Virus record (IMG/VR): IMGVR_UViG_3300042391_000634
Location: 248,001-312,000 of that record
Length of the DNA: 64,000 bases
Strand: one strand, 5' to 3'
Shown here: in pieces, positions 1 through 55,167 of the stretch
Layout of the letters: each line of letters opens with the position of its first letter
Numbering within the stretch: the stretch's first letter is position 1
The notes under the pieces: generated by a model
What the model saw: the letters and a program-made list of their open reading frames with translations, nothing else
Databases searched by the model: none
What the model was told of the DNA's origin: nothing
Translations under genes and position numbers: made by a program

Positions 1-1
1 T

Positions 2-574
2 ATTTACGATATTGCAGGTAGTAATTACACGGGTTCTTTAATCAATAGTCCAACATATTCAACAGGAAGTTTAACATTGAATGGTTCATCACAATATATT
101 AATATGAACGCTTCAGCTGTAGTACCTGGCGGTGCAAGTTCATATAGTGTATCTACTTGGGTATATAGAACAAGAAATGATGTTGGATACGAAGAAGTAT
201 TAGCTCAATGGACATATGCAAATTCAGGTAATTCATTCTATTTTGGTTTTAATAATAGTAATGTTAGATTTAGTGATACTTGGTATAATGTAACAGTTTC
301 AGGTGCTGGAACTATAAATACTTGGATGAATATTGTTGGAGTTAATTTCGGCGGGTCAAATGCTCATATTTACATAAATGGAAATTTGATGGCGGTCAAG
401 GGTTCTGCATTAACATATACAGGAACTGCAAATATGATTATAGGTAGGCAGGGTGAGTTAGATGGAGAATATTTTTCAGGTAAAATTGGTCAAATATTAA
501 TATACAATAAGGCTTTAAATAAAGCTGAAATTTTAAATAATTACTATTCAACTAAATCTAGATTTGGATTATAA
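2..574 (+). CDS. LamG/concanavalin A-like domain protein (5'-truncated by window edge), probable virion protein
   Basis: Frame open from nt 2; LamG motifs 'WMNIVGV..IYING','IIGR..YFSGKIGQILIYNKAL..EI..NY'; ends KSRFGL like paralog at 1188. Confidence 0.8.
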   Translation: MYDIAGSNYTGSLINSPTYSTGSLTLNGSSQYINMNASAVVPGGASSYSVSTWVYRTRNDVGYEEVLAQWTYANSGNSFYFGFNNSNVRFSDTWYNVTVSGAGTINTWMNIVGVNFGGSNAHIYINGNLMAVKGSALTYTGTANMIIGRQGELDGEYFSGKIGQILIYNKALNKAEILNNYYSTKSRFGL

Positions 575-586
575 AATAAAATAACT

Positions 587-1183
587 ATGGGATTTAATAT
601 AGGAGGTTCTACTTTATCGTCATCAATGTTAACACCGGATGGTGTTATATTACCAAAAAACTTTAAAAGAGTTACAAGTGATATGATTGATAGTGTAGTT
701 AACACAAACTGTACACTTTTATCACAAGGAAATGATAGTACCGGTGGATATGCAATTTCATATCAATTTAATTTAGGTGGATGTGGTGGTACTGAATCTG
801 GTTTATATGTTAAAATAAAAAACACAATTACTTGGTCAAGAATATTTTGTAAATTTACAAATGAAGGTAGTGCCGCATGTTGGACATTTAATCAAAATGG
901 TTATGGTGGACTATCACCTAACTTAGCATCTTATAATACTGGATTAGGTGACATTATATTTCGTTGGGATGCATCAAATGCATTTGAAAATACACAATTT
1001 AATGTACAAACTGGCGCATGTGATAATGAGGCTACAAATTTTATGAGATTCAGTGGTGTCAAATCTTTTTATATGTTTATGAGAAGAAATGATAGTAATA
1101 TTGCCGGAATCGGTCACGGTAGATCTTGTAATTCTACCGGCGGAGGATCTTATTGTACAATATCAGAAATTTATATAATATAA
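587..1183 (+). CDS. Hypothetical Gly/Ser/Cys-rich protein, likely virion-associated
   Basis: 198 aa ORF between two LamG genes; no family recognised. Confidence 0.5.
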   Translation: MGFNIGGSTLSSSMLTPDGVILPKNFKRVTSDMIDSVVNTNCTLLSQGNDSTGGYAISYQFNLGGCGGTESGLYVKIKNTITWSRIFCKFTNEGSAACWTFNQNGYGGLSPNLASYNTGLGDIIFRWDASNAFENTQFNVQTGACDNEATNFMRFSGVKSFYMFMRRNDSNIAGIGHGRSCNSTGGGSYCTISEIYII

Positions 1184-1187
1184 CATT

Positions 1188-1964
1188 ATGCCATTAGATT
1201 TAACAGGAAATAAATTAAATAGTACTTCAATAGGCCCCAAAGGTGAAGTTTTAAAACAAATCTCATCTGATGGTCTGATATTTCATGTTGATGCTGCAAA
1301 TAAAAATTCTTATTTAGGTTCGGGGTCAACATGGGTTGATTTAAGTGGTAACAATAATAATGGTACATTATATAACTCACCAACCTTTGCTTCAAATGAT
1401 GCAATTGGTAATTTAGCATTTAATGGATCAAATCAATACATGCAAGCAAATATCTCATCAACACTATTAAATGGTGATCCAAATTTTACAATTGAAATGT
1501 TTGTAAAAAGAACAGCAACATTAGTCGGTACGGCAGGTGCTTATTGGGGATTGGGACAAGGAGGAACACAAGGATTTGCAGTACAAGGATGGACACCTAC
1601 AGATAATAGAATACATATGGATTTATGGGATTCATCAAGAGTTGATACTCAACAAGATTATCCATTAAACACTTGGGTTCATATTGTTTGGTCTAAAATA
1701 GGTACGGGTATTAGTCCTAGTACGGTTAATTGTTTTATAAATGGTGTTGCGGCAAGTTGTATATCAGGTAGAGAACAAACATCAGGACCAAACTATCCAA
1801 CATCGACCGCAGGTAATGGTATTGCAATTGGAAGAATTGCCGGTAATTACGATGGATACTATGGACAAATGAAAATGGGTGTTTTTAGAGTGTACACAAG
1901 AGGTATATCATTAAAAGAAGCGGCACAAAATTTTAATAGTCAAAAATCAAGGTTTGGTTTATAG
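1188..1964 (+). CDS. LamG/concanavalin A-like domain protein
   Basis: 'GLIFHVDAANKNSY.GSGSTWVDLSGNNNNGTL..P' N-terminus typical of phage LamG proteins; 'RVYTRGIS..E..QNFN'. Confidence 0.8.
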   Translation: MPLDLTGNKLNSTSIGPKGEVLKQISSDGLIFHVDAANKNSYLGSGSTWVDLSGNNNNGTLYNSPTFASNDAIGNLAFNGSNQYMQANISSTLLNGDPNFTIEMFVKRTATLVGTAGAYWGLGQGGTQGFAVQGWTPTDNRIHMDLWDSSRVDTQQDYPLNTWVHIVWSKIGTGISPSTVNCFINGVAASCISGREQTSGPNYPTSTAGNGIAIGRIAGNYDGYYGQMKMGVFRVYTRGISLKEAAQNFNSQKSRFGL

Positions 1965-1988: not shown

Positions 1989-2720
1989 ATGATTACCAAT
2001 CAAGATTTCATAACAGGAAATATCACAACAAATGCTGGTGACTCAGTCCCTTATAGATGGACACACGGTGCAACGACAGAACATATGGGTGATGGTCTTA
2101 TTGTCTATTCACTGATACAACATATGAGAGCAAAAACGTGTGTCTGTATCGGGTCGGGAGGTGGGTTTATACCCCGTATTATGACACAAGCAAGATTGGA
2201 TTTACACAAACAAGGAATATTTGAAGGTAATCCAGATATTAATTGGGGAGACATTGGTGTAACATATATCGTTGACGCATGTAACGGTATTGGAGGTCCA
2301 AATGATTTAGAGGATGAAAACTCATACTATCACAAACAATTCCAACCACGATTAATTAAATCAACATCAGAAGATGCCTACTATAATTTCTTTGTTCTAC
2401 AAGATATAAAGATAGATGTTTTATTTATTGATGGTGATCACTCATATGATGGAGTTAAGTTGGATTTTGATTTGTATTCAAATATTTTATCAGATAAAGG
2501 AATTATTATTATACACGATACCGATCCAAATTACGAGGAAAATCTATTAATATCGGAAGATTCAAAAAAAGACCATCACAGATTCGACGGACCATCAAAA
2601 TTAGTTAAAGAATTAGAAAAAAACCCATCATATAATTTGATTAATTTATATAATTTTCATATATTACCTAATAAACCATCATCAAGTGGTATAACGGTAA
2701 TTAATAAGAAAAATGGTTAA
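1989..2720 (+). CDS. Class I SAM-dependent methyltransferase (Methyltransf_24-like)
   Basis: 'CIGSGGG' motif I; 'IDVLFIDGDHSYDGVKLDF..Y...L...GIIIIHD'. Confidence 0.8.
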   Translation: MITNQDFITGNITTNAGDSVPYRWTHGATTEHMGDGLIVYSLIQHMRAKTCVCIGSGGGFIPRIMTQARLDLHKQGIFEGNPDINWGDIGVTYIVDACNGIGGPNDLEDENSYYHKQFQPRLIKSTSEDAYYNFFVLQDIKIDVLFIDGDHSYDGVKLDFDLYSNILSDKGIIIIHDTDPNYEENLLISEDSKKDHHRFDGPSKLVKELEKNPSYNLINLYNFHILPNKPSSSGITVINKKNG

Positions 2721-3570
2721 ATTATTAACAGTCATAGGTCACGGAACAAATTTACTTTCACATTTCATTGAACATTATCAAAAACATGTTGATGAAATTA
2801 ATATTGCTGTTTATGAAACAGAATTACATCCAAATTTAACAGAAGAAATTAATGAAGTAATTAAAAACTACGAAAAAGTTAATGTTGTTATAACCGTTCA
2901 AGAAAGAGTATTTGATTGGGAAAAAGTAACACAACTTTATAATTTTGTTAAATCAAAACGAAAAGATAGTTGGTATGTTATTGCCGATATTGATGAATTT
3001 CATTTATATCCTAATGACGATTTACATAAATTAATATACGACTGCCAAGAAAATAATTGGGACATTGTAAGAGGTGGTTTTATTGATAGAATTGGTAGAG
3101 GAGGTGAATTTAGTGAATTAGTTAACGATGTATCTATATGGGAACAATTCCCAAATGCGGGGTTCTTTAGATATCCAATGAGTAAAGCATGTCCAAATAA
3201 GATTTGTATTATGAAAGGATATGTTGATGTGACGGCAGGACAACATTATGCTAAAATTAATGACCACACAACATGGAGATGGCAAGGGTGGAGCCATCCA
3301 TTGATTGCACCAATCAAAACACACTCAGTACAAGTTCATCACTTCAAATGGGATTCAACATCAATAGATAGAGTATCAGATGTTGCAAACCTAAATGAAG
3401 ATTATGCGTTTTCAAGTGAATATTTTCAAATGTATAAAGAATTAAAGAAGACAAATTTTAAAATAGATTTATTAAATCCTGATTTTATGTTTGAATTAGG
3501 ATTAAATAAACCCGAATATAACCGTTATAAAAATTGGAATAAATTAATTAAAAAAATCATATCAATATGA
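2713..3570 (+). CDS. GT-A fold glycosyltransferase (GT2-like)
   Basis: 'FIEHY', 'WYVIADIDEF' DxD motif, 'HHFKW'. Confidence 0.7.
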   Translation: MVKLLTVIGHGTNLLSHFIEHYQKHVDEINIAVYETELHPNLTEEINEVIKNYEKVNVVITVQERVFDWEKVTQLYNFVKSKRKDSWYVIADIDEFHLYPNDDLHKLIYDCQENNWDIVRGGFIDRIGRGGEFSELVNDVSIWEQFPNAGFFRYPMSKACPNKICIMKGYVDVTAGQHYAKINDHTTWRWQGWSHPLIAPIKTHSVQVHHFKWDSTSIDRVSDVANLNEDYAFSSEYFQMYKELKKTNFKIDLLNPDFMFELGLNKPEYNRYKNWNKLIKKIISI

Positions 3571-3821
3571 CAAAGGAAGAAAAAGATAAAATTGAACTTG
3601 AACTTGAAACACGTAAAATCAAGGCATTAGAAAAAATTGCAAATTCATTAGATGCACTAACTGTGTGGTTTGAGGAAATAGATAAAGATGAATGGGGAAA
3701 TAGGGTCCAATATTATTTAGCTGAATTTCATAATAAAATAGTGAAAGAAATTCCATTTAAAGAAGAAGAGGAAGAAGAAATTAAAACTGACGATAAGAAA
3801 GTAAAGAAAAATGCGAAATAA
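3567..3821 (+). CDS. Hypothetical charged protein
   Basis: 84 aa ORF overlapping both neighbours. Confidence 0.5.
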   Translation: MTKEEKDKIELELETRKIKALEKIANSLDALTVWFEEIDKDEWGNRVQYYLAEFHNKIVKEIPFKEEEEEEIKTDDKKVKKNAK

Positions 3822-5226
3822 AAAAATCGGAGTAGTTGTTCCATTTAGAAATAGATACGACCAACTTGACATTTTTAAAGAGAGAATTACAAAATATCTT
3901 AGTGAAAAGAACATTTCATATGAAATTATCATAGTTGAACAAGATGATGCTAAATTGTTCAATAGAGGAATGTTATTGAATATAGGATTTACTTATGCTG
4001 AGAAACTTAAATGTAAGTATGTTGTTTTTCATGATATAGATATGTTACCGATTGATGTAGATTATGGTTATAGTACCACCCCATTACATTTGGCCACTAA
4101 TTTCTTAAACAATGAAAGGGAATTATTCGATACCTATTTTGGTGGAGTTACAATGTTTAATGTTAAAGATTTTAAAAAAATAAATGGGTATTCAAACAAA
4201 TATTGGGGTTGGGGATATGAAGATGATGATTTACTTTTAAGATGTGTCGTTAATGATTTAGATTTAGATACATTAATTTTAAAAAACGTAGGAACAAATG
4301 GAACGGCATTAAAATTTAACGGTAACGATGCGTATGTTAAAGGAATTAATAATTTTAATTTAAATAATAATATTACATTTTTTATTTCATTTTATCCTGA
4401 TAATATTAAATGTAATTATATTGACGATTCGGATCAATATAATATATTCACAATACCTGGTTATGACTTCGCCATATCATATAATTCATTTTCAAGATAT
4501 AATTTCTGTACGTTTGATGAAAATAATAACGTATTATATGTTAATTCTAAAATAAAGAAAAATTATAAAACAAACATTTCAATAACAATTAACAATACCG
4601 AAAAAATAATTAAAGTTTATCAAGATGGGGAATTAATTGGTAAAATTGAATCATTTGAGAAACTTCATCAATATAAAAAGCAACCATTTTTTTATATTGG
4701 AACAAGTGACCCAAATAATGAGTTAAATCCTAAATATTTTAAGGGATATTTTGATTCTTTGGCGGTGTATGATACTGTTTTAGAGGATGATGAAATATTA
4801 GAAATTTCACAAAATAAGTATAGAGGATTATTACAAAATTTTGGAAATTATAACTCTGCTGACCTTATTAAATTATATTATGACACTAAGATAATAAAAG
4901 GTTATAAATTAAAAGATTTATCAGGAAATAATAATGATGGTGAAATCATTAATTGTGAAATTACAGACTTAATAGTAGATAGTATATACGAATTATATGT
5001 TCCACATAGGAGAAAATCTCTATTTGAAAGTTTACCTCACGAAGAAAATGGATTTTTAGATAACAAATGGAAAGATCAATCTACTAGATGGAATCAACTA
5101 CGATTTATAAATGAAGTATCTACAAATCACGAATTATTATATAACGATGGATTATCAGATTTAAATTTTGCAGAACACGGAATAACAAACGAAAATAACA
5201 TAACATTTGTAACAGTTGGAATATGA
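3811..5226 (+). CDS. GT7 (beta-1,4-galactosyltransferase-like) with inserted LamG domain
   Basis: 'VPFRNR','FNRGMLLNIG','FHDIDMLP','YFGGV','NGYSNKYWGWGYEDDD'; LamG segment about 4291-4960; GT7 tail 'H..N..RF..DGLSDL'. Confidence 0.85.
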   Translation: MRNKKIGVVVPFRNRYDQLDIFKERITKYLSEKNISYEIIIVEQDDAKLFNRGMLLNIGFTYAEKLKCKYVVFHDIDMLPIDVDYGYSTTPLHLATNFLNNERELFDTYFGGVTMFNVKDFKKINGYSNKYWGWGYEDDDLLLRCVVNDLDLDTLILKNVGTNGTALKFNGNDAYVKGINNFNLNNNITFFISFYPDNIKCNYIDDSDQYNIFTIPGYDFAISYNSFSRYNFCTFDENNNVLYVNSKIKKNYKTNISITINNTEKIIKVYQDGELIGKIESFEKLHQYKKQPFFYIGTSDPNNELNPKYFKGYFDSLAVYDTVLEDDEILEISQNKYRGLLQNFGNYNSADLIKLYYDTKIIKGYKLKDLSGNNNDGEIINCEITDLIVDSIYELYVPHRRKSLFESLPHEENGFLDNKWKDQSTRWNQLRFINEVSTNHELLYNDGLSDLNFAEHGITNENNITFVTVGI

Positions 5227-6656
5227 GTCATAAATTAGGTATTTGTATACCGTACAGAAATAGAAAGGAACACATTGAGAATTTGATACCACATTTATCA
5301 AAATATTTAAATGAAAAAGGAATAGAACATAAATTTTATGTTGGACATCAAGTTGATGATAAATTATTTAATAGAGGTGCAACAAAAAACATTGCAGCAC
5401 ATTATGCGTTTGAAGATGGTTGTGATTATGTAGCTTGGCACGACGTGGATATGTTAGCAATTGATAAAGATAATTTAATTTGTGATTACTCCTATCCTGA
5501 AAAATCACCAATTCACATTGCAACCAAATTATCAAAATATAACTACACACTAGGGTATGATCAATACTTTGGAGGTGTTGTTTTATTTACCAAAGAACAA
5601 GCGTATCAAACCAATGGTTATTCAAACGAATATTGGGATTGGGGTCAAGAAGATGATGATCTTTTTTGGAGGTGTTATTTTGAGGGTTATAAAGATGGTA
5701 AGATTTTTAAATCACATAAAGAAAAATCGGTTGTAAATTTTAATGGAGACGATTCATTAGTGGTTATACCAACAAACGAAAAGATAAGTAAATGTTTATC
5801 TGGTAATCATACTATTTCTGTATTATTTAAAGCAGAACAACAACAAGAGAAAGTGCCTATTTGGTTGGTTGGTGACAAAGAAAAGAAATTTATTGAATAC
5901 CCAATATTAAGAAAACACGAATCTTGGACATGGGGGTTATCCTTTAATAATTCAAGGACGGTTAACATGACAGTTTTTGATAAAAACGAAAATTATCATA
6001 ATAATTGGGTTAAGAAATTTGAAAATGAATGGACGTGGGTAACAGTTTCATTTGATAATAAAACAAAAGAAATGTATTTCTTTGTTAACAATGAATTGGT
6101 TACTAACGTAAACGATGTTAAAGAGAATAAACCATTCATGGTCGGAGAAAACCTTAAAAAACATGATAACACCAATCCATTTATATTAGGGTTTTGTAGT
6201 AATCAAAAAACATATTTTAAAGGTCAAATTGCTGAAGTTAAAATATATGACAAGTGTTATAAAAATATAAAAACGTCGATTAGTAAAGAAAAAAGTTTAG
6301 TTTTACATATGGATTTTGAGAATGGTTATTTAGATATAATAAATAACATAATATGTGAAAATCTTAATACTGAAATTACTAAAGAAAATATTGAAGTTAT
6401 TGATAATATAATCCCAATAAGAAGAGAAGGTAATTTTAATTGTATGTTCCATGAAGATGAAGGATTTATTAATGGTGAATGGAAAAAGGGAGAGACGACG
6501 GCAAGAAATGAAAAAAGATTTGTTACTGAAATGCAACAAAAGAAGATAGATTATAAAGAAGACGGATTAAATAAAATATTAGAAGTATTGGATATTATTA
6601 ATGTTGATGAAACAATATACCCAAATACAATGTTTATAAATGTTAAAACAAAATAG
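5223..6656 (+). CDS. GT7 paralog with inserted LamG domain
   Basis: 'IPYRNR','FNRGATKN','WHDVDML','YFGGV','NGYSNEYWDWGQEDDD'; LamG segment about 5730-6360; tail 'RNEKRF..DGLN'. Confidence 0.85.
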   Translation: MSHKLGICIPYRNRKEHIENLIPHLSKYLNEKGIEHKFYVGHQVDDKLFNRGATKNIAAHYAFEDGCDYVAWHDVDMLAIDKDNLICDYSYPEKSPIHIATKLSKYNYTLGYDQYFGGVVLFTKEQAYQTNGYSNEYWDWGQEDDDLFWRCYFEGYKDGKIFKSHKEKSVVNFNGDDSLVVIPTNEKISKCLSGNHTISVLFKAEQQQEKVPIWLVGDKEKKFIEYPILRKHESWTWGLSFNNSRTVNMTVFDKNENYHNNWVKKFENEWTWVTVSFDNKTKEMYFFVNNELVTNVNDVKENKPFMVGENLKKHDNTNPFILGFCSNQKTYFKGQIAEVKIYDKCYKNIKTSISKEKSLVLHMDFENGYLDIINNIICENLNTEITKENIEVIDNIIPIRREGNFNCMFHEDEGFINGEWKKGETTARNEKRFVTEMQQKKIDYKEDGLNKILEVLDIINVDETIYPNTMFINVKTK

Positions 6657-6657
6657 A

Positions 6658-9462
6658 ATGTTTTTAGAATACGAAAAACCATGGTTATTAGAGTTACCAA
6701 ATATTAATAGCGATAAAATAAATCCATTATTAACGGAAAGCACAACGTTAACAATAGAATTTAAAGTAGATAAATTTCACGATGATAGTGAAAAAATTGG
6801 ATTCTTTGGGATGCCAGGTAAAAACTTTGGTATTAGTTACGATTTTGAGGTCGAGACATTTGTATTTGAATTTTGGACAAAGGGAAATAAAGGAAAAGAC
6901 ACTTTTCATTGTTACAAAGATTTTCATATTAATAGAAACGACATTGAAAATGGTATAGTGTTTACTTTAATATATGATAAAGAAAATTTAAAGTTTGAGT
7001 TATATCATAATTTTTATTTATTTTTTGAAATTGAATTAGACGGTCCATTATTTGAAGATTACTTAACCCAACCGTTATATATGGGTTGCCACAATCCCGA
7101 TGCTGACAATGAAAGACATAGATGTTTTACTGAAATGGACGTACTTCATTTTAGTATTTTTAATGGAGTAAATGATATACTTGAAATTGAAAAATTCTAT
7201 AACAATAGTAAAATAAAAAACGATAATTTATCATGTTATTTTGATTTTAAGGAAAAATATTTAGTTCATAAAGAAGATATGGAATATAATATTATCCAAA
7301 ATCAAAAAGACAAACTTATCAAGATTTCATTAAGTGATTTAAATAGTAGTGTTGCTGACAGAATTAAACATAAGAAAATAAGGGTGCCGGGTTTAAAGAT
7401 AGAACACCAAAAACCTTTTATCTTAAAAACAAAAGAATTACAAAACATATTAACCAATAAAAGTTATTCACTTAACATTACTTTTAAAGTTGAAAGACAA
7501 TATACTCAAGATCAAAAAATAGGATTCTTTGGTATACCAGGTAAAAACTTCGGTATTAGTTTTGACTATGAAGTGGAAAAATTTGTTTTTGAATATTGGA
7601 CACAAAAAAATGAAACAGACACCCAATTTCATTGTCATAAAGATTATAAGATAAATCAAAATAATTTACATAATGGTTTAACGATTTCAATTATATATGA
7701 AAAAAATTCATATTTTGAATTATACCACAATTATAATTTAATTGATAGAATTGAAGTAACCGATGATTTATTATTTGATTATGATTTACAACCTTTATAT
7801 TTCGGTTGCCACAATCCAAGCTCTTTATTGGAAAGTCATAGATGTTTTACTGAAATGGAATTAAATCATTTTAGTGTTTATGAGGGGGTTATGGACATTA
7901 AAGACATTGAAAAAAATATTAAATCCGATAACCTATTAACACATTTTAATTTTAAAAGGACTGAAGACAATGAGATTTTTGATAGTATTAATAAAGAAGC
8001 CTCAATTGAAATGGTAGATCTTTTATCGTTCAAAAAAATGGTCGATTTTAATCAAATGAAAGATAAGTTAAATAAAGTCGGTTGTGGATTTTGTTTAGCT
8101 AAATGGACACAAGTAACAATGCACTTACATAATGGTACAACACATAGTTGTCACCATCCTGAACCACACAAGATAGGTTTAGATGAGATTAAAAGAAATC
8201 CAACATCGTTACATAATAGTGTAGTTAAAAAACAAGCAAGAAAAGAAATGTTAGAAGGTAAACGACCTTCAGAATGTCAATATTGTTGGAATGTTGAAGA
8301 TAATTCAGATTCTTTTTCTGATAGATTTTTTAAATCATCAGAACCGTGGTCTGAACCTTATTTTGATGAGATTGCTAATTCACATTGGAGAGATAACTAT
8401 AATCCAAAATATGCTGAAGTTAGTTTTTCTAATACGTGTAATTTTAAATGTGCGTATTGTGGTCCCGAATATTCTTCTAAGTGGATGGAAGAAATAAATG
8501 AATACGGTGGATATAGTTTAGAGACACACGAATATAATGGGACAAAAAGAATGGAGGATAGAGGAACTAAACCATATAGACAAACCGAAGAAAATCCATA
8601 CGTCGAGGCGTTTTGGCAATGGTTCCCTGAATTATACTCAACGTTAGATACTTTTAGAATAACAGGAGGAGAACCTTTACTATCTAAAGACACATGGAAA
8701 GTATTGGATTATATTATCGAATCTGAAACACCTAATAAAGAATTAAAATTATCAATCAATAGTAATTTGGGGGTTAACGATGAATTGATAGATAGATTAA
8801 TATTGAAACTTGAAAAAATAATATCAGAAGATAGAGTCAAAGAAGTTGTAATATTCACATCATGTGAGGGTTACGGTAAACAAGCCGAATACACAAGATT
8901 TGGATTAGAATTTGATAGATTATTTTCAAACATTGATAAGATATTAACAGTATTAGATAAAGTAACAATTGTTGTAATGTCAACCTTCAATGTGTTCAGT
9001 ATATTCTCTTATGAGAAATTAATTAAAAAGATATACGAATATAAAATTAAACATTTCAACACTAAGAGGTATTGGAACTCAGCAATAATTTTAGACACAT
9101 CATATCTTCGTCACCCATCTTTTATGACATTTAGAATATTAAAAGATTATATAGATGTTGAATATTTTAATAGGTGGATTAAATACATGAAGTTTAACTC
9201 AACATACAGAAGTCTAAATTTCTATGAACAACAAACAATTGAAGACGTAGGATTCTCAACACAAGAAATAGAAAAGATTGTAAGATTAAGAGATATATTT
9301 GTAACAGACTACGAAACTGAAATGAGTTTATTTGATGATAATAAAAAAGATTTCTTGAAATTCATAAAAGAATATGAAGTAAGAAGAGGTATGAACTGCC
9401 AAGAATACTATCCTGAATTAACTAACTTTATTAAAAAAATAGAAAATGACAATAAATTATAG
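6658..9462 (+). CDS. Radical SAM protein (N-terminal twitch type) fused to two LamG-like repeats
   Basis: Two repeats 'KIGFFG.PGKNFGIS.D.EVE.FVFE.WT'; 'CGFCLAKW..HSCHH','CQYCW'; CNFKCAYC; 'ITGGEP'. Start moved to ATG 6658 after upstream stop. Confidence 0.85.
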   Translation: MFLEYEKPWLLELPNINSDKINPLLTESTTLTIEFKVDKFHDDSEKIGFFGMPGKNFGISYDFEVETFVFEFWTKGNKGKDTFHCYKDFHINRNDIENGIVFTLIYDKENLKFELYHNFYLFFEIELDGPLFEDYLTQPLYMGCHNPDADNERHRCFTEMDVLHFSIFNGVNDILEIEKFYNNSKIKNDNLSCYFDFKEKYLVHKEDMEYNIIQNQKDKLIKISLSDLNSSVADRIKHKKIRVPGLKIEHQKPFILKTKELQNILTNKSYSLNITFKVERQYTQDQKIGFFGIPGKNFGISFDYEVEKFVFEYWTQKNETDTQFHCHKDYKINQNNLHNGLTISIIYEKNSYFELYHNYNLIDRIEVTDDLLFDYDLQPLYFGCHNPSSLLESHRCFTEMELNHFSVYEGVMDIKDIEKNIKSDNLLTHFNFKRTEDNEIFDSINKEASIEMVDLLSFKKMVDFNQMKDKLNKVGCGFCLAKWTQVTMHLHNGTTHSCHHPEPHKIGLDEIKRNPTSLHNSVVKKQARKEMLEGKRPSECQYCWNVEDNSDSFSDRFFKSSEPWSEPYFDEIANSHWRDNYNPKYAEVSFSNTCNFKCAYCGPEYSSKWMEEINEYGGYSLETHEYNGTKRMEDRGTKPYRQTEENPYVEAFWQWFPELYSTLDTFRITGGEPLLSKDTWKVLDYIIESETPNKELKLSINSNLGVNDELIDRLILKLEKIISEDRVKEVVIFTSCEGYGKQAEYTRFGLEFDRLFSNIDKILTVLDKVTIVVMSTFNVFSIFSYEKLIKKIYEYKIKHFNTKRYWNSAIILDTSYLRHPSFMTFRILKDYIDVEYFNRWIKYMKFNSTYRSLNFYEQQTIEDVGFSTQEIEKIVRLRDIFVTDYETEMSLFDDNKKDFLKFIKEYEVRRGMNCQEYYPELTNFIKKIENDNKL

Positions 9463-10183
9463 AGAACCGTATTGGTTAAAGTTTCAATGGGACTTATCTA
9501 CACATCATGAAAATCAATATGTAACTGAATTCAATAAATCTGAAAATCTATCATTAACTGATTTTTTTTACAACGAAAATTTTATTATTACATGTAATTT
9601 TAAAATAGAAGATAACTATGAGGGTGAGGATGTTCGTATGATATTTGGTAAATCAGGTAAAAATATGGGATTAAGGTATAATAAACCACAAAGGGAGTTG
9701 TGTTTTGAATTTTGGACGACTACTGAATCTGAAGATTGTTATAATAATGTTTTATTTCCATCGGTAACTAAAGAAGATATTGAAAAAGGAATAACTGTTA
9801 GTGTTATTAGAGATGAAAACAGAATAACCGTTTATAAAAATTTTGTTGAGGATAATCATATTGATTTTGACAATGAGTTTGTTAATGATTATAAAAGACC
9901 TGGTTTATTTATCGGTTGTTGCAGTCCAAGTCCACATCCAAACACATTCGGAGGTTTTACTAAAATAGAAATGAATCATTTTTCATTAATAAGTAAAACT
10001 TCAAACATTAAAGATTCTAAAAGTATATATGAAAAGGAAACCGATGTGATTTTAAAAAATAGATTTTATGATGATATCGTCTGTTTATATGACTTTAAAA
10101 CAGTTAATAATTTAGGTATAGTATACGATGAATCTAAAAATAGTAATTTCTTAGAAAAGGTACCAAAAGAATTTATTATATAA
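9446..10183 (+). CDS. Stand-alone copy of the LamG-like repeat domain
   Basis: 'IFGKSGKNMGL.Y','FEFWT','LFIGCCSP','EMNHFS','CLYDFK' match the repeats of the 6658 ORF. Confidence 0.65.
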   Translation: MTINYREPYWLKFQWDLSTHHENQYVTEFNKSENLSLTDFFYNENFIITCNFKIEDNYEGEDVRMIFGKSGKNMGLRYNKPQRELCFEFWTTTESEDCYNNVLFPSVTKEDIEKGITVSVIRDENRITVYKNFVEDNHIDFDNEFVNDYKRPGLFIGCCSPSPHPNTFGGFTKIEMNHFSLISKTSNIKDSKSIYEKETDVILKNRFYDDIVCLYDFKTVNNLGIVYDESKNSNFLEKVPKEFII

Positions 10184-10228: not shown

Positions 10229-11683
10229 ATGTCAGAACACTTAAGTGATTGGAGAGATGAACATTTAAATAAAGTAAGTTGTAGTTTTTGTGCGGCTAAA
10301 TGGTTAAACGTAAGTTTACATTTAGGTCATGGATTTACAAATTCATGTCACCTACCATTACCACATCCAATAGATGTTGAAGCAATTAAAACCAACCCTG
10401 CGGCATTACATAATACCGATTTCAAAAAAGAAATTCGTAAAATGATGTTAGAGGGTATTAAACCGGCAGAATGTTCTTACTGTTGGAAGATTGAGGATAT
10501 CGGTAGAAATAATATTTCTGATAGGGTATATAAGAGTCAAATATATAGTCCTGAAGATATTGCGGCGTTAAAGGAATTACCTTGGGATGCAGATATTATA
10601 CCTCAAACTATGGAGGTTAGTTTTGATAGAACATGTAATTTTGCATGTTCATATTGTAATTCAGGATACTCAACAACATGGGGTAAAGATATTAGAGATA
10701 ACGGACCATATCAAAATTTTAAAACCACAAGTGCAGGTGCCTATTACGCAGATGGTTCTTGGTCGGAGATTTATGGTAAATACAATGAAAACAATCCGTA
10801 TGTGGATGCTTTCTTAAAATGGTGGCCTGAATTGTCACAAAAATTAATGGAAATACGTATAACTGGTGGGGAACCATCACAGTCACGTAATTTTTGGCAG
10901 TTTATGGATGTAATGAAACAATACCCATCCCCTAATTTACGACTTGCAGTCAATTCTAACCTAGGTCTTAACGAAACGACTATGAATAGGTTAATTAGTA
11001 TATCTCACGAATTAGATATCAAAGAATTCGATTTATATACAAGTTGTGAAGCTTATGGTGAGCAAGCGGAATATATTAGAGATGGATTAAATTATGAACT
11101 ATGGAGAAGTAATTTAGTTAAAGTAATTGAGAGCGCTAAAATTAGACAAGTTGTTATCATGATGACAATTAATAGTTTGTGTTTATTTAGTATTACCGAA
11201 TTTTTAGATGATATGTTGAAATTAAAAGAAAAATACGGAACACATAAACCAGTTGTAGATTTTAACATATTAAGATGGCCAGCATTTATGTCACCGCTTA
11301 CATTACCGGATGATGTAAAACATGATTTACATGGTAAGTTATCAATGTGGTGGAGAAAACATAAAAAGAATCCATTAATTAATATGAATGAAGGTGCACA
11401 AATCCAAAGATTAATTGATTATATCGAAGTTGTTAATAGAGGTCATAACACAAGTGAAATGGATATGTCGATGCAATATCACGATTTTAAAAGTTTCTAT
11501 GTTCAATATGATATTCGTAGAAATAAGAATTTTGTAAAAACATTCCCTGAATTGGAAGATTGGTATAATTCATTAGTAATTGATAATACAATTCCATATG
11601 TGGCAATGACTGATGGTAGAATAACTCATTTTGAGCCAGGTGTATATGTTTCAGATAAAGAAAATTATAACAAACCAATTTAA
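10229..11683 (+). CDS. Radical SAM protein (N-terminal twitch type)
   Basis: 'CSFCAAKW..NSCH','CSYCW', CNFACSYC, 'ITGGEP'; paralog of the 6658 C-terminal half. Confidence 0.85.
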   Translation: MSEHLSDWRDEHLNKVSCSFCAAKWLNVSLHLGHGFTNSCHLPLPHPIDVEAIKTNPAALHNTDFKKEIRKMMLEGIKPAECSYCWKIEDIGRNNISDRVYKSQIYSPEDIAALKELPWDADIIPQTMEVSFDRTCNFACSYCNSGYSTTWGKDIRDNGPYQNFKTTSAGAYYADGSWSEIYGKYNENNPYVDAFLKWWPELSQKLMEIRITGGEPSQSRNFWQFMDVMKQYPSPNLRLAVNSNLGLNETTMNRLISISHELDIKEFDLYTSCEAYGEQAEYIRDGLNYELWRSNLVKVIESAKIRQVVIMMTINSLCLFSITEFLDDMLKLKEKYGTHKPVVDFNILRWPAFMSPLTLPDDVKHDLHGKLSMWWRKHKKNPLINMNEGAQIQRLIDYIEVVNRGHNTSEMDMSMQYHDFKSFYVQYDIRRNKNFVKTFPELEDWYNSLVIDNTIPYVAMTDGRITHFEPGVYVSDKENYNKPI

Positions 11684-13417: not shown

Positions 13418-13444
13418 AAAAAGGGACATTAAGTCCCTTTTTTT
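13418..13444. terminator. Bidirectional intrinsic terminator
   Basis: AAAAAGGGAC-attaa-GTCCCTTTTT between convergent genes. Confidence 0.85.
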
Positions 13445-13991
13445 ATGATTCGTAATATAACTCAGGATATTCAACTATAACATGAATACCACCTTCAGTA
13501 TAAGCGTTTTTATAAATTGATTCAATCTCTGAATAATTTTTTAAATCCCAAAATTTAGTATTGGGACATATAGATTTAAATTCTTCAAAATAATTACCTC
13601 TATGTTGGTGACCCGGATCTAATGGTTTATCAGAACCTTTACCTAAACGAACAATCATATTAGGTTTCCATTTACCTTGACTCATTAACCCAATTTTATC
13701 AACATGATTTACCAATTGATTTGTTGCACATATTACAAAATCCCAACGAGGGTAGAATGTAATAACAAATTTACCGGCCATTGCCATTCCTAATGACATA
13801 CCCATTTGAGATTCTTCCATAACGGGAAGTTCAATTAATTTATCTTTAGGAACTTCACCTATTGTGGTACTCATAGGATTACCGTGCCAAAGGACTTGTT
13901 GACCTATAAAAACGGTATCTTCCTGTTGACCAAGGTAAGTCATTGAATTAGTTAGTGCGTCCTTGTACGGGGTGTATTGTGGTGAACTCAT
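13443..13991 (-). CDS. TPP enzyme beta subunit (pyrimidine-binding domain only; PDH E1-beta/transketolase-like)
   Basis: 'VFIGQ','ELPVMEESQMGMSLGMAMAG','NQLVN','GHQH','VIVEY'; ATG 13991 overlaps upstream TGA. Confidence 0.8.
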   Translation of the reverse strand: MSSPQYTPYKDALTNSMTYLGQQEDTVFIGQQVLWHGNPMSTTIGEVPKDKLIELPVMEESQMGMSLGMAMAGKFVITFYPRWDFVICATNQLVNHVDKIGLMSQGKWKPNMIVRLGKGSDKPLDPGHQHRGNYFEEFKSICPNTKFWDLKNYSEIESIYKNAYTEGGIHVIVEYPELYYES

Positions 13992-14821
13992 ATTAAATCT
14001 TTTTCTATTCTTTTTATTATGTTTTGTGCAAATATTTGATGACATTCTTTTGACGGGTGGTGATCCAACGGAGGTGTATTTGTGAAGTTATTAAAGTCAC
14101 TTTTAATTTCCATATTACCATGTCTCCTCTGTAAATTTTCTATTGTCTCAAACGGTTCCCCATTATATTCAATGTTAATAAATTTACTATAAAGATATTC
14201 ATCTTTTTTAATTCTACTAAGTAATTCGTCCGTCCAAGCAAATATAATTGGTTTTATACCTTTTTCTTCATAAAACATTAATTTTTCCTTCAATCTTTCA
14301 ACTTGTAAATCTTTATGTAATTCAAACCATTCATCAACAGACATATTATTTTGTTCCATCCATATAAATAAATTTTCAATGTTGTATCCAAAATTTATCT
14401 TGTTATCACCACCAACCCAAGCACCACAGAATTGTTTTTTACCATTCAAAGTAAACCAAAATTTATTTCTCGAAACTTGACTTAATTGAATTATAATATA
14501 ATCAATATCTTCATATGAATATTTTTCATATGATAAATGTTCTTGACCTTTTGTGTTACGGTCAAAAATAGTGTTAAAAAAATCAAACGTTTCATCTTCA
14601 GAACCACCATTAAGATTTTTTACAACTTCAAATGTATTAAAATGATTCGCAATCAATCTTGGATGACGAATTGTATCTTTAAATTTTAAATGTGCGTCAG
14701 TTAAATGATGTCTTTCATATGTTGTTTCATTTGGGGGATAAACTAAACCAGGTAAATCCGAATAGAAATATAACCCCTGACCCCATGTAAATGAACAACC
14801 CCCAAATAGTAATCCTTTCAT
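13988..14821 (-). CDS. SGNH-like hydrolase/acyltransferase family protein
   Basis: 'GGCSFTWGQG','GGS','DHHPSKECH'. Confidence 0.6.
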   Translation of the reverse strand: MKGLLFGGCSFTWGQGLYFYSDLPGLVYPPNETTYERHHLTDAHLKFKDTIRHPRLIANHFNTFEVVKNLNGGSEDETFDFFNTIFDRNTKGQEHLSYEKYSYEDIDYIIIQLSQVSRNKFWFTLNGKKQFCGAWVGGDNKINFGYNIENLFIWMEQNNMSVDEWFELHKDLQVERLKEKLMFYEEKGIKPIIFAWTDELLSRIKKDEYLYSKFINIEYNGEPFETIENLQRRHGNMEIKSDFNNFTNTPPLDHHPSKECHQIFAQNIIKRIEKDLI

Positions 14822-18680: not shown

Positions 18681-19860
18681 TATTATTTCTTAATTTTTTA
18701 AAGTATTCAATATCATAAGTATCATTAGATATTTCTGATATTATTTTTTTATTTTGTATTAATCTATCAACATTTGTATCATAAAATTTTTTTACATCCA
18801 AACCATTTAATTTTTCAATTTCATGCACAATAAGACTAAACCTTTTTTTATCGTCAATTTCATTATCATATGAGTGGTCAATAAAATCATCAAACATATC
18901 AAATTTATATATTTCCTTTAATTTTTTAACATGTCCATATGTTGTTAAAAAAATAGGTAATTGATAAAAATTAAATGGTTTAAAAGATTTTTCAGTAATA
19001 TGAATACGGTTACCCTCAAAATAGGTTTCAGTTACGATATTAATATAGGCACTTTCAAATGTTTTAGTGTAAATAAAATCATTTTCTAAATTATCATTTA
19101 ATTGATTATATTCATATTTACTTTTTTTGATACCTAATTTATTAAAATATTCTACGTGTGGCAGTAAAGAATTAATTTCATCGTCACTATATAATTTTCT
19201 AAAAAACTGATAGTAATCTCTATTTGGGTCATCATTTAAAAGAAATGACCAATCAGTATTATTAAGAATATTTAATTTTTTCATTTCCAAAAGAATTCCA
19301 AATCTATGAGGTTTAATTCTTTTATTGTGGCACATAAATAAAAATTCTTTATCTGTTACAATATTAATATTATTTTTAAAAATGTGTTTTGAATAATAGG
19401 AAGGTAGAAATCTTAAAGAATAAACATTAACACCATTATTTTTTAATTTATAATAGTCTAAATTAGAATTATTATTAATAAAATAAAATTGATTAGGATT
19501 TAATTCTTGTTTTATTACCGATTCACTAAGTAAAATATAATTTTCTTCTGATTCAGATTCATGTTCATTTAAAAAAACAACATTTAAATTTTTATTGTTT
19601 TTCATTAATTCAATAAATTCAGGTTTTAGAAATGTCGGTAGTCCTAAAAATCTTAAATCAGATAATTGATAAATAAAATAATAGTAATTCTCATTACTAT
19701 TTTCAATAGAATTACATTCAATGATATTATTAATACCAATAGATTCCAAAACATTTTTTATTTTACTAAATTTACGTTCTTTAGGTTCTCTAATTTGATA
19801 ATAATATCTCTCATCAATATCTTCGTAATCACCCACTAATATATTTAAAAAATCACCCAT
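18673..19860 (-). CDS. Putative GT-B glycosyltransferase, GT10-like paralog 3
   Basis: 'MCHNKRIKPHR','NIVTET..HITEKSFKPF','DHSYD'; likely ATG at 19860. Confidence 0.5.
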   Translation of the reverse strand: MGDFLNILVGDYEDIDERYYYQIREPKERKFSKIKNVLESIGINNIIECNSIENSNENYYYFIYQLSDLRFLGLPTFLKPEFIELMKNNKNLNVVFLNEHESESEENYILLSESVIKQELNPNQFYFINNNSNLDYYKLKNNGVNVYSLRFLPSYYSKHIFKNNINIVTDKEFLFMCHNKRIKPHRFGILLEMKKLNILNNTDWSFLLNDDPNRDYYQFFRKLYSDDEINSLLPHVEYFNKLGIKKSKYEYNQLNDNLENDFIYTKTFESAYINIVTETYFEGNRIHITEKSFKPFNFYQLPIFLTTYGHVKKLKEIYKFDMFDDFIDHSYDNEIDDKKRFSLIVHEIEKLNGLDVKKFYDTNVDRLIQNKKIISEISNDTYDIEYFKKLRNNNG

Positions 19861-20477
19861 TTCCCTGTTCCGTAGTGCGGCCACTCTTTTTTATATTCAT
19901 ACCAAATAACATCATTAGGTATTTCTCTTTTAATACCATTCCAAGTTTCCTCAGTTGGTGTATTTGTAGATACCCCATTATCCTCAATAATAAAACGAAT
20001 AGGTAAGTCGTAACGTTGTGCATATTTATGCATTTCATAAAAACCACCAGTTTCAAATGCCATATCACCAATAAAACACCAAACTTTATCATCTTTATTA
20101 TCTCTTTTATTGGCCATAGCAACACCGGTTGCAATTGGAATAATAGCCCCAACAATTGCCGAAGCATAAAATTTATACTCTTCACTAACAATTGTAATAG
20201 ATCTTCCCTCTATAATTTCTTGTTCTAACCATTCTGATGGTATTCCCTTAATTAATGCGTGATAATGTGATCTCCACGTACTAAAGACCCAATCGGTTGG
20301 TTTTATTCTTTTACCAATTTCAAGTAATTGTTCTTCATTACCACCACTTAAATGTACTGGTCCTTTTATTCTTCCAGCTTCCCAATGGTCGGCAATTGTT
20401 TTCTCAAAACCAATTAAACCATGTTTATCCCAAAGAACTTCATTTACTATGGGATATTGTTCTAAATTTTTTATCAT
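19845..20477 (-). CDS. TPP enzyme alpha subunit (PDH E1-alpha-like, short)
   Basis: 'GPVHLSGGNE','STWRSHYHAL','AIVG', TPP motif 'GDMA..G..(x)..EDN'. Confidence 0.85.
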   Translation of the reverse strand: MIKNLEQYPIVNEVLWDKHGLIGFEKTIADHWEAGRIKGPVHLSGGNEEQLLEIGKRIKPTDWVFSTWRSHYHALIKGIPSEWLEQEIIEGRSITIVSEEYKFYASAIVGAIIPIATGVAMANKRDNKDDKVWCFIGDMAFETGGFYEMHKYAQRYDLPIRFIIEDNGVSTNTPTEETWNGIKREIPNDVIWYEYKKEWPHYGTGKWVIF

Positions 20478-54924: not shown

Positions 54925-55167
54925 TTATGCTCTTTGTCCTCTGTTTATTCTTCCCGTTAATATATTTATTACTTCGTTGTCAATTTCTTCCACAATTTGT
55001 TCCGACATTAATCTTGTTAATTCAGCCTCAGCATCAATTCCATGATAATAATTTAAATCATCAACCAATTCAGGTCTCCATTGTGCTCGTAATGTTCTAA
55101 CGATATTCTGAATACCTTCCGATTGAATTGTTATCCCATGAAAAAATCTAAACTGTCTAACTCCCAT
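54925..55167 (-). CDS. Small protein carrying a T4 gp23-like major capsid protein segment
   Basis: 'RTLRAQWRPELVDDLNYYHGIDAEAELTRLMSEQIVEEIDNEVI'; likely ATG at 55167. Confidence 0.65.
   Translation of the reverse strand: MGVRQFRFFHGITIQSEGIQNIVRTLRAQWRPELVDDLNYYHGIDAEAELTRLMSEQIVEEIDNEVINILTGRINRGQRA

What the first reader, a model, noticed from the sequence alone, without database searches (positions are those of the whole stretch)
3811..6656. Two tandem GT7 enzymes with a LamG lectin domain inserted inside the catalytic domain
Seen: in both genes the GT7 core up to W.WG.EDDD is followed by about 200-220 aa of LamG-like sequence (ALKFNG..YF.G...A..D..L..D). The final GT7 elements then resume (H..N..RF..DGL). 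Known: GT7 beta-1,4-Gal/GalNAc transferases are mostly eukaryotic, and this C-terminal His loop binds metal and closes over the acceptor. Inference: the insertion sits next to the acceptor loop and may select the acceptor, give processivity or tether the enzyme to the virion. The two paralogs may form a heterodimer.
Basis: partly seen in the sequence, partly recalled or inferred. Interest (0 to 1): 0.72.

Follow-up and report, generated by a model that had tools for sequence, protein, structure and literature searches.

The report
Phage galactosyltransferase pair with nested lectin-fold domain
Two neighbouring genes of an uncultured 336-kb freshwater T4-like phage each encode a complete galactosyltransferase-type (GT7) enzyme with a whole LamG/pentraxin-type domain nested inside it just before the metal-binding lid; the design is real, occurs in hundreds of uncultured aquatic phages, and has no description that I could find.

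Summary

All catalytic motifs are invariant in both paralogs: DxD, YFGG, WxWGxEDD and the metal-binding C-terminal His. Both therefore look active, cytoplasmic and UDP-hexose dependent.

The family has more than 500 hits in IMG/VR and about 65 clusters at 50% identity. A is followed directly by B in 79 of 80 loci, mostly with overlapping stop and start codons. The pair sits in a conserved cassette: methyltransferase, GT2-like transferase, an 84-aa acidic protein, A, B and twitch radical-SAM enzymes.

The role of the insert (acceptor recognition is my best guess), the acceptor and any A-B contact remain inferred. I found no cultured phage, PHROG, NCBIfam model or paper covering it. Verdict: a new variant of a known kind, of moderate to good interest.

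The parts
3811..5226 (+). GT7A gene (P0001, 471 aa): GT7 enzyme with a nested LamG domain
   Evidence: ORF; Pfam GT7N, GT7C and Laminin_G_3; AF2 model pLDDT 93.8, pTM 0.89
3811..4284 (+). GT7A N-terminal catalytic segment (aa 1-158): PFRNR, FNRG, D75xD77, Y109-FGG, W132xW134-G135xE137-D138-D-D, then the helix after the xED motif
   Evidence: Aligned to beta4GalT7/beta4GalT1 at E 3.5e-29 (single sequence) and 6e-43 (profile); Foldseek rmsd ~2 A at 31-34% identity; residues invariant
4294..5001 (+). GT7A inserted LamG/pentraxin-type beta-sandwich (aa ~162-397)
5002..5223 (+). GT7A C-terminal catalytic segment (aa 398-471): P398, RR, F405, C-His H410, lid with W420/K421, N428, R431-F432, D446-G447-L448, final strands
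   Evidence: Profile stretch 417-466 aligns to human B4GalT1 'DKKNEPNPQRF...DGLNSL...' (weak on its own). The structural alignment runs through to bovine residue 398. Residues invariant
5223..6656 (+). GT7B gene (P0002, 477 aa): paralog with the same nested architecture. N core aa 1-160, insert ~165-393 (nt 5715-6401), C segment 394-477
1989..2720 (+). Cassette member: SAM methyltransferase (Methyltransf_24)
   Evidence: Pfam E 2.6e-11; present in 75 of 80 related viral loci in the same order
2713..3570 (+). Cassette member: GT-A (GT2-like) glycosyltransferase, 285 aa. Atlas neighbour clusters carry GT92 (a lead only)
   Evidence: Weak Pfam Glyco_tranf_2_4 hit, E 0.002; Atlas; 79 of 80 loci
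3567..3821 (+). Cassette member: 84-aa acidic protein with no Cys and no known family; the most conserved gene of the cassette
   Evidence: 80 of 80 loci at 74% median identity; only viral clusters in the Atlas; no Pfam, NCBIfam or PHROG match
6640..9462 (+). Cassette member: two LamG-like N-terminal repeats plus a twitch-domain radical SAM enzyme (940 aa)
   Evidence: NF033640 E 3.4e-91; repeats homologous to ORF 9446-10183, which matches the GT7 insert profile (hhalign 72%, E 3.4e-5)
9446..10183 (+). Stand-alone LamG-like module (245 aa)
10229..11683 (+). Cassette member: twitch-domain radical SAM enzyme (484 aa)
   Evidence: NF033640 E 3e-88; homolog present in 71 of 80 loci

Best explanation
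A and B are two active, soluble, cytoplasmic, metal-dependent inverting glycosyltransferases of family GT7 (GT-A fold). They probably use a UDP-hexose donor and make beta-1,4 links. In each, a complete LamG/pentraxin-type beta-sandwich of ~235 aa is nested in the hairpin between the helix after the WGWGxEDDD (xED) motif and the strand that carries the metal-binding C-terminal His at the hinge of the flexible lid. They are translated as a coupled pair within a conserved phage cassette (methyltransferase, GT2-like GT, 84-aa acidic protein, A, B, twitch radical-SAM enzymes). The cassette lies in a >60-kb glycan-biosynthesis island of a T4-like jumbo phage. I propose that A and B add two successive sugars to one phage-specified glycoconjugate. 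I also propose that the nested LamG domain is a built-in acceptor-recognition module that holds the glycan or glycoprotein acceptor next to the lid. This would parallel the appended lectin domains of ppGalNAc-Ts, the PA14 domain of B4GALNT3 and the lectin domain of MGAT4. The faster-evolving, paralog-specific inserts would give A and B different acceptor specificities. Shown here: the architecture, conservation of catalytic residues, distribution, gene pairing and cassette. Inferred: activity, donor, linkage, ligand binding by LamG, order of action and the acceptor.
For: Architecture:
- Pfam matches.
- AF2 models with pLDDT 93.8 and 90.8.
- Independent ESM Atlas models of relatives show the same global shape: TM 0.91 over 469 residues.
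- The insertion is clean against 17 short GT7s.

Catalytic competence:
- Invariant in both families: P11/R13/R15, F50-N51-R52, D75xD77, Y109-F-G-G, W132/W134/G135/E137/D138 and H410.
- Y109 aligns with the Tyr of 'QYFGG' in B4GalT1.
- There is no N-terminal extension: model residue 1 aligns with the start of the core.

Insert as a specificity module:
- Within-family identity is 64-71% for the core and 44-47% for the insert. Between A and B it is 42% for the core and 22% for the insert.
- Each family has its own invariant insert residues.
- LamG-like modules recur on the neighbouring radical-SAM enzyme and as stand-alone proteins.
- The GT-A C-terminal tail is a region that carries acceptor-specificity determinants (PMC7185993).
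- Lectin domains that steer GTs are established (PMC4432651, PMC13018970, PMC9296478).

Pairing:
- A is followed by B in 79 of 80 viral loci.
- Stop/start overlap is -4 or -1 in 68 of 71 loci.
- A natural A'-B' fusion exists, as does a natural B-radical SAM fusion.
- The cassette is conserved.
Against: - There is no biochemical evidence, and no ligand-binding site in the LamG domain was identified.
- Model coordinates could not be inspected, so the position of the LamG face relative to the acceptor pocket is inferred only from chain order.
- The faster evolution of the insert could equally reflect weaker constraint.
- The acceptor is unknown. The attractive candidate, the collagen-like fibres encoded just upstream, is not obligatory, because two near-complete relatives that carry the pair have no collagen repeats.
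- Transcription is supported only by short contigs in one RNA library.
Confidence: 0.6

Rival explanations
1. A and B form an obligate two-site complex (heterodimer) that acts as a polymerase. It would build a repeating beta-1,4-linked disaccharide polymer, with the LamG domains acting as product-binding processivity clamps. This partly overlaps the best explanation.
For: Strict A-then-B adjacency (79 of 80 loci). Overlapping stop/start codons (68 of 71). A relative, P0264, encodes A'-B' in one 450-aa chain, with its halves grouping with A and B (SH-aLRT 95 each). Both paralogs keep all catalytic motifs.
Against: No direct evidence of contact; the complex prediction gave no verdict and counts neither way. 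Adjacency and coupling are equally expected for consecutive steps of a pathway. P0264 is known from a single 2.7-kb contig.
Confidence: 0.25
2. The LamG insert is a protein-protein tether rather than a lectin. It would dock the enzymes onto a phage structure or scaffold, such as collagen-like fibres, the stand-alone LamG proteins or the 84-aa acidic protein. Glycosylation would then happen on the assembling particle, or the enzymes would be packaged.
For: The cassette lies directly downstream of four giant collagen-repeat genes and five stand-alone LamG genes. Collagen runs lie within 8 kb upstream in 28 of 86 related loci. LamG and pentraxin folds often bind proteins. The 84-aa protein is universally present and highly conserved.
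Against: Two near-complete relatives carry the pair but no collagen. Stand-alone LamG genes are present in only 12-15 of 80 loci. There are no virion proteomics data.
Confidence: 0.15
3. One or both proteins are catalytically dead GT-like binding proteins (pseudo-enzymes).
For: Paralog pairs with one inactive member are known among glycosyltransferases (my own knowledge, not tested here).
Against: The DxD, xED and YFGG motifs, the C-His and the UDP-binding motifs are invariant in both families across 48 sequences each.
Confidence: 0.04
4. This is a plain end-to-end fusion or an annotation artefact: GT7 followed by LamG followed by an unrelated tail.
For: Pfam alone shows only GT7N, a truncated GT7C and then LamG.
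Against: The C-terminal 75 residues align with the end of short GT7s and of B4GalT1. In two AF2 models and in independent ESM Atlas models they complete the GT-A fold.
Confidence: 0.02

Closest known systems
Animal beta-1,4-galactosyltransferases B4GALT7 and B4GALT1 (CAZy GT7; PDB 3lw6, 4irq, 1tvy, 1o0r)
   Different: The phage enzymes have no membrane anchor or stem and lack the first ~45 positions of the Pfam GT7N model. A ~235-aa LamG sandwich is nested between the post-xED helix and the His strand. The lid between the His and RF is ~9 residues longer and carries an invariant Trp (W420). They are phage-encoded and cytoplasmic.
Insert-less prokaryotic/viral minimal GT7s (~223 aa; e.g. P0363, P0376, P0390; Parachlamydiaceae, Casimicrobiaceae and giant-virus homologs)
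   Same: These are the closest relatives of the catalytic parts: 36-42% identity overall and 50-55% in the N core for some. The 'R(K/R).G.F.SL.H' strand follows directly after the helix.
   Different: They have no insert. They are usually single genes in bacterial glycan or other contexts, not the phage cassette.
Glycosyltransferases steered by a lectin domain: ppGalNAc-Ts (GT27, ricin-type lectin), B4GALNT3 (GT7, PA14), MGAT4A/B
   Same: A GT-A catalytic domain is combined in cis with a carbohydrate-binding-type fold that directs activity toward glycoprotein or primed substrates (PMC4432651, PMC13018970, PMC9296478). GT7 and GT27 fall in the same GT-A clade (PMC7185993).
   Different: In those enzymes the lectin domain is a separate domain outside the catalytic fold (appended, from my own knowledge). 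Here it is nested inside the fold, right before the lid hinge, and it belongs to the LamG/pentraxin class. Ligand binding is untested.
Lactose synthase (beta4GalT1 plus alpha-lactalbumin)
   Same: Conceptually similar: a second protein module sitting by the closed lid re-specifies the acceptor of a GT7 enzyme (my own knowledge; PDB 1nf5 is among the best structural matches).
   Different: Alpha-lactalbumin is a separate, unrelated protein that binds in trans. Here the module is covalently nested, and no such effect has been shown.
UniProt/AFDB A0A2E0BNI5 and ESM Atlas clusters annotated only as 'Galactosyltransferase C-terminal domain-containing protein'
   Same: Same full architecture: AFDB TM 0.73 over residues 5-471, and Atlas TM up to 0.91. 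All Atlas clusters are Uroviricota.
   Different: These are database entries only. They have no functional annotation and no description of the nested design was found.

Membership tests
CAZy GT7 / Pfam Glyco_transf_7N + Glyco_transf_7C | Significant match to both family models | tested here: met
   A scores 70.9 and 69.7 bits; B scores 58.6 and 66.5 bits. The cut-offs are 27 and 23. The 7C match stops at profile position ~62 of 78 because of the insert.
CAZy GT7 / Pfam Glyco_transf_7N + Glyco_transf_7C | GT-A fold superposable on solved beta4GalT structures, including the C-terminal strands | tested here: met
CAZy GT7 / Pfam Glyco_transf_7N + Glyco_transf_7C | DxD metal/donor motif | tested here: met
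   H74-D75-I-D77 in A and H73-D74-V-D76 in B. Both are invariant in 48-sequence family alignments.
CAZy GT7 / Pfam Glyco_transf_7N + Glyco_transf_7C | WGWGxEDDD acceptor/catalytic-base (xED) motif | tested here: met
   W132-G-W134-G135-Y-E137-D138-D-D140 in A and W-D-W140-G141-Q-E143-D144-D145-D146 in B. Aligned to B4GalT1 'WGWGGEDDD'.
CAZy GT7 / Pfam Glyco_transf_7N + Glyco_transf_7C | C-terminal metal-binding His at the hinge of a flexible lid | tested here: met
   H410 is invariant in A, B and 12 short GT7s. It lies in the segment that superposes on the beta4GalT1 C-terminal part. Residue-level equivalence to bovine His347 is inferred, because no residue-by-residue structural alignment was available.
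CAZy GT7 / Pfam Glyco_transf_7N + Glyco_transf_7C | Inverting beta-1,4 transfer of Gal/GalNAc from a UDP-sugar | not testable with these tools
   Needs an enzyme assay. The Tyr at the position of B4GalT1 'QYFGG' (Y109) hints at a hexose rather than a HexNAc donor, by analogy only (plus my own knowledge).
LamG / ConA-like lectin superfamily (Pfam Laminin_G_3) | Family model match above the cut-off | tested here: met
   44.6 and 40.0 bits against a cut-off of 27.6.
LamG / ConA-like lectin superfamily (Pfam Laminin_G_3) | Two-sheet jelly-roll sandwich superposable on solved LamG/pentraxin domains over the whole domain | tested here: met
LamG / ConA-like lectin superfamily (Pfam Laminin_G_3) | Carbohydrate or Ca2+-dependent ligand binding | not testable with these tools
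Lectin-domain glycosyltransferases (GT27 ppGalNAc-T type; B4GALNT3 PA14 type) | Lectin domain is a separate unit appended outside the catalytic fold | tested here: not met
   Here the domain interrupts the catalytic fold. It may work like these enzymes, but it is not a member of their architectures.
T4-like (Gp23-type capsid) tailed phage, as the carrier genome | Gp23 major capsid protein | tested here: met
   PF07068 at 211 bits in the 335,630-bp record. The nearest capsids are from an uncultured 484-kb phage, Microcystis phage Mel-JY01 and Flavobacterium phage immuto, at ~40-44% identity. No NCLDV capsid was found, but that search also found nothing in the control genomes, so it is uninformative.

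The most novel reading that the evidence does not exclude
The nested LamG domain may act as a covalently built-in specifier protein. Because it enters and leaves the fold 13 residues before the hinge His, ligand binding by LamG could be mechanically coupled to lid closure. Catalysis would then be gated by recognition of the correct glycoconjugate, a cis analogue of alpha-lactalbumin's control of beta4GalT1. Under this reading, A and B (single-chain in the relative P0264) would form a two-site machine that lays down an alternating beta-1,4 glycan on a phage-specified carrier.
Probability: 0.15. Interest if true: 0.8.

Novelty: new variant of a known kind. Interest (0 to 1): 0.58.

Why it matters
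GT-A glycosyltransferases are usually steered by loops or by appended lectin domains. A whole lectin-fold domain nested at the lid hinge of a well-understood enzyme (beta4GalT) would be a natural experiment in coupling substrate recognition to lid closure. It is also a compact, soluble, bacterial-expressible GT7 scaffold for glycoengineering. Nature supplies matched controls: insert-less ~223-aa relatives and an insert-less A'-B' fusion. Ecologically, the pair marks a conserved cassette in hundreds of uncultured lake and ocean jumbo phages that invest more than 60 kb in glycan synthesis. Identifying its product would show what these phages glycosylate, whether their own fibres or virion or the host envelope.

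Tried and rejected
- **Heterodimer test.** Complex prediction on A plus B with locus-matched family alignments scored 0.00 and returned 'no answer'. It counts neither for nor against binding.
- **Collagen-like fibres as the obligate acceptor.** Four giant collagen genes lie just upstream, and collagen runs lie within 8 kb of the pair in 28 of 86 loci. However, two near-complete relatives with the pair have no collagen match. I dropped it as a general explanation.
- **Cultured phages.** blastn and tblastn against 50,697 GenBank phage records found no match. PHROGs and NCBIfam have no family for A or B. BFVD has no full-length structural match, only LamG-only or GT7-only viral proteins.
- **Giant-virus origin.** The NCLDV capsid search was negative but also found nothing in the controls, so it is uninformative. 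The Gp23 capsid settles the carrier as a T4-like phage.
- **Transcription.** One lake metatranscriptome holds five short contigs over A/B, one of them identical. None bridges the junction and DNA carry-over is possible, so I do not count this as expression evidence.
- **RiPP-like reading** (84-aa peptide plus radical SAM plus GTs). I considered it but did not pursue it. The peptide has no Cys, and I ran no test.
- **Geometry of the LamG face relative to the acceptor pocket.** Model coordinates and PAE are not exposed, so this could not be measured.
Full report
**1. What is there**

The window is positions 248,001-312,000 of a 335,630-bp IMG/VR virus record. GC content is about 29%. The record encodes a T4-type Gp23 major capsid protein (PF07068, 211 bits). 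Its nearest relatives are capsids of an uncultured 484-kb phage, Microcystis phage Mel-JY01 and Flavobacterium phage immuto, at about 40-44% identity. Near-identical DNA occurs in many lake and freshwater metagenomes. The carrier is therefore an uncultured freshwater T4-like jumbo phage.

The finding covers two ORFs that overlap by ATGA:
- 3811-5226, gene A, protein P0001, 471 aa
- 5223-6656, gene B, protein P0002, 477 aa

**2.

Both proteins match Pfam Glyco_transf_7N, Glyco_transf_7C and Laminin_G_3 above the curated cut-offs. The 7C match breaks off at profile position ~62 of 78. The paralogs are 30% identical over their whole length.

By sequence, the best solved relatives are beta4GalT7 and beta4GalT1, but only for residues ~4-165 (E 3.5e-29). 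A profile of 99 family members raises this to E 6e-43. It also aligns profile positions 417-466 to the B4GalT1 C-terminal 'DKKNEPNPQRF...DGLNSL...' stretch. That second match is weak on its own, but it is in the right order.

**3. It is a nested domain, not a fusion**

AlphaFold2 models built with family alignments are confident: A has pLDDT 93.8 and pTM 0.89; B has pLDDT 90.8 and pTM 0.85.

- It aligns model residues 1..471 (A) and 1..477 (B) to bovine beta4GalT1 residues 177/178-398/399.
- Scores against beta4GalT7 are similar.

So the ~158 N-terminal and ~75 C-terminal residues together rebuild one GT-A domain.

Insert-less GT7 proteins of ~223 aa are the nearest relatives of the catalytic parts (36-42% identity). 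In them, the sequence runs straight from the helix after EDDD into the 'R(K/R).G.F.SL.H' strand. In a second alignment, none of 17 short GT7s (nor either half of P0264) places a single residue in the columns of A residues 159-397.

The insert is therefore ~235-240 aa. It sits between the post-xED helix plus one short strand (A 153-158) and the strand (A 404-407) that leads to the invariant His410. In the terms of Taujale et al. (PMC7185993), that is between the xED/alphaF element and the C-His, at the start of the C-terminal tail. That paper links this region to acceptor specificity.

**4. Both copies look catalytically competent**

The following are invariant across both families, in A numbering:
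- P11, R13, R15 (PFRNR)
- F50-N51-R52
- H74-D75-x-D77
- Y109-F-G-G
- W132, W134, G135, E137, D138
- H410, N428, G447

Y109 aligns with the Tyr of B4GalT1 'QYFGG'. From my own knowledge, that Tyr disfavours HexNAc donors, so a UDP-hexose donor is my inference.

Model residue 1 aligns with the first core strand, so there is no signal peptide, anchor or stem. These are soluble cytoplasmic enzymes. The lid between the His and the RF pair is about nine residues longer than in beta4GalT1 and carries an invariant Trp (W420).

**5. Distribution**

- Word-indexed searches found more than 2,100 relatives of A and about 1,700 of B (90%-identity clusters) with the same Pfam architecture, on contigs up to ~350 kb.
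- The exhaustive profile search of 1.84 billion representatives gave 1,426 hits at E <= 1e-30. About 65 of these are full-length (450-500 aa) 50%-identity clusters.
- IMG/VR holds at least 524 relatives.
- Among 185,579 GTDB species genomes, the full architecture appears only on a few MAG contigs. These are labelled Pelagibacterales, Flavobacteri-, Gammaproteobacteria, Anaeromicropila and Spirochaetales. At least the first five carry the same A-B tandem and are probably mis-binned phage contigs.
- Short GT7s occur in Parachlamydiaceae, Waddliaceae, Casimicrobiaceae, Steroidobacter and others. One lies inside a chlamydial type-III secretion cluster. Another lies next to a sulfotransferase and a GT10 fucosyltransferase.
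- No cultured phage record, PHROG or NCBIfam model covers A or B.
- BFVD has no full-length match. AFDB has one fold cluster, A0A2E0BNI5, named only by its Pfam domain.
- Six literature searches found nothing on this design.

**6. The pair and its cassette**

- In 79 of the 80 best viral loci, A is followed directly by B. The one exception ends at the contig edge.
- In 68 of 71 loci, the stop and start codons overlap by 4 or 1 nt, which implies translational coupling.
- The gene order around the pair is conserved:

| Gene | Loci (of 80) |
|---|---|
| Methyltransf_24 | 75 |
| 285-aa GT2-like GT | 79 |
| 84-aa acidic protein (74% median identity, the most conserved member) | 80 |
| A | 80 |
| B | 80 |
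| Twitch-domain radical SAM (NF033640) | 71 |

- Atlas neighbours of the GT2-like protein carry GT92. This is a lead only.
- In this window, the next gene (6640-9462) carries two LamG-like repeats in front of its radical SAM domain, and ORF 9446-10183 is the same module alone.
- One related contig encodes B fused in frame to the radical SAM enzyme (914 aa).
- A 450-aa protein from another contig (P0264) is a single chain of two insert-less GT7 domains. On a tree of the catalytic columns, its N half groups with A and its C half is sister to B (SH-aLRT 95 each; quick search, and the N half sits on a long branch). So the A/B split predates the separation of insert-bearing and insert-less forms. 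Whether LamG was inserted once and lost twice, or was spread between the paralogs, is unresolved.
- A direct test of A-B binding by complex prediction gave no verdict.

**7. Wider context**

The whole window is a glycan-biosynthesis island. It contains:
- GT1/GT4, GT2 and GT9 enzymes, one with a TibC-type N-terminal domain
- epimerases/dehydratases and a UDP-glucose dehydrogenase-like protein
- a carbamoyltransferase, TPP enzymes and several radical SAM enzymes
- a collagen/Peptidase_S74 fibre

Immediately upstream of the window lie four giant collagen-repeat proteins and a row of five stand-alone LamG proteins. That suggested fibre glycosylation. But two near-complete relatives with the pair have no collagen repeats, so collagen cannot be the general acceptor.

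**8. How it most likely works**

Shown here:
- the nested architecture
- an intact catalytic apparatus in both paralogs
- a strictly coupled pair inside a conserved cassette

Inferred:
- Each enzyme transfers a hexose from a UDP-sugar in a beta-1,4 linkage.
- The two act consecutively on one phage-specified glycoconjugate.
- The LamG sandwich, entering and leaving the fold 13 residues before the hinge His, serves as a built-in acceptor-recognition module.

Two things support the third inference. First, the insert is the fastest-evolving and most paralog-specific part: within-family identity is 64-71% for the core versus 44-47% for the insert, and between A and B it is 42% versus 22%. Second, lectin domains are known to steer GT-A enzymes (PMC4432651, PMC13018970, PMC9296478). 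Weaker constraint on the insert would explain the first point equally well.

The rivals are a two-site A-B polymerase, a protein tether, a pseudo-enzyme and a plain fusion. They are listed with their tests in the rival explanations.

**9. Verdict**

The functional ideas remain open. This is a new variant of a known kind: a GT7 glycosyltransferase steered (presumably) by a lectin-fold domain. The unusual features are that the domain is nested at the lid hinge, that the genes occur as an obligate tandem pair, and that the family appears confined to uncultured aquatic jumbo phages.

Noticed in passing
G000:C1:226505-245421 (L140:505-19418), just upstream of the window; also window 46170-48197: There are four giant collagen-repeat ORFs (892, 1630, 1199 and 1240 aa, plus an unassigned 1105-aa ORF between them). 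A collagen/Peptidase_S74 fibre lies inside the window. All 15 G-x-y runs of the genome cluster at 220-250 kb, apart from this one.
   Followed up: partly
G000:C1:245428-249961 (window 1-1964): Five tandem stand-alone LamG_3 paralogs (233-258 aa) share N-termini of the form MP(L/I/F)(N/D)xxG and C-termini K(S/Q)R(F/Y)G(L/R). A 198-aa unknown ORF sits among them.
   Followed up: partly
window 4834-5001 (A aa 342-397) versus window 1266-1379 (LamG258 aa 27-64): The 'DLSGNNN.G' hairpin lies after the Pfam LamG core in the GT7 insert, as in pentraxins, but before it in the stand-alone LamG neighbours. The HMM hit has E 0.0015 and BLAST gives E 2e-4. This suggests the insert and the stand-alone modules are circular permutants of each other.
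   Followed up: partly
window 6640-9462 and 9446-10183: The 940-aa twitch radical SAM enzyme carries two N-terminal LamG-like repeats. The same module occurs alone in the next ORF. LamG-type modules are thus attached to several different enzymes of one cassette.
   Followed up: partly
window 3567-3821: An 84-aa acidic, Cys-free protein overlaps the start of GT7A. It is present in 80 of 80 related loci at 74% median identity, which makes it more conserved than the enzymes. It has no known family.
   Followed up: partly
L104:4175-6916: A natural in-frame fusion of GT7B (with its LamG insert) to a radical SAM domain (914 aa) occurs on one related IMG/VR contig.
   Followed up: partly
L141:749-2101 (P0264): A single 450-aa chain contains two insert-less GT7 domains. 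The N half groups with family A and the C half is sister to family B. It is known from a single 2.7-kb contig.
   Followed up: partly
window 14823-17435 (-): An 870-aa protein has two NAD-dependent epimerase/dehydratase domains flanking a 2OG-Fe(II) oxygenase (PF13640) domain.
   Followed up: no
window 38337-39467 (+): A GT9 heptosyltransferase-like protein has a weak TibC N-terminal domain match. That domain is known from a protein-glycosylating heptosyltransferase.
   Followed up: no
window ~54958-55137 (-): A second, short Gp23-like match (47.7 bits, profile positions 135-194) lies in a 98-aa open frame, far from the real capsid gene at 125 kb.
   Followed up: no
L009:6001-6684: An insert-less 227-aa GT7 sits inside a chlamydia-type type-III secretion gene cluster (CdsD, T3SS ATPase, SepQ) in an NCBI assembly.
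   Followed up: no
window 28669-30336 (+) and 13443-14045 / 19845-20477 (-): A carbamoyltransferase and split transketolase/E1-like TPP enzyme genes lie in the same island. They hint at unusual modified sugars.
   Followed up: no
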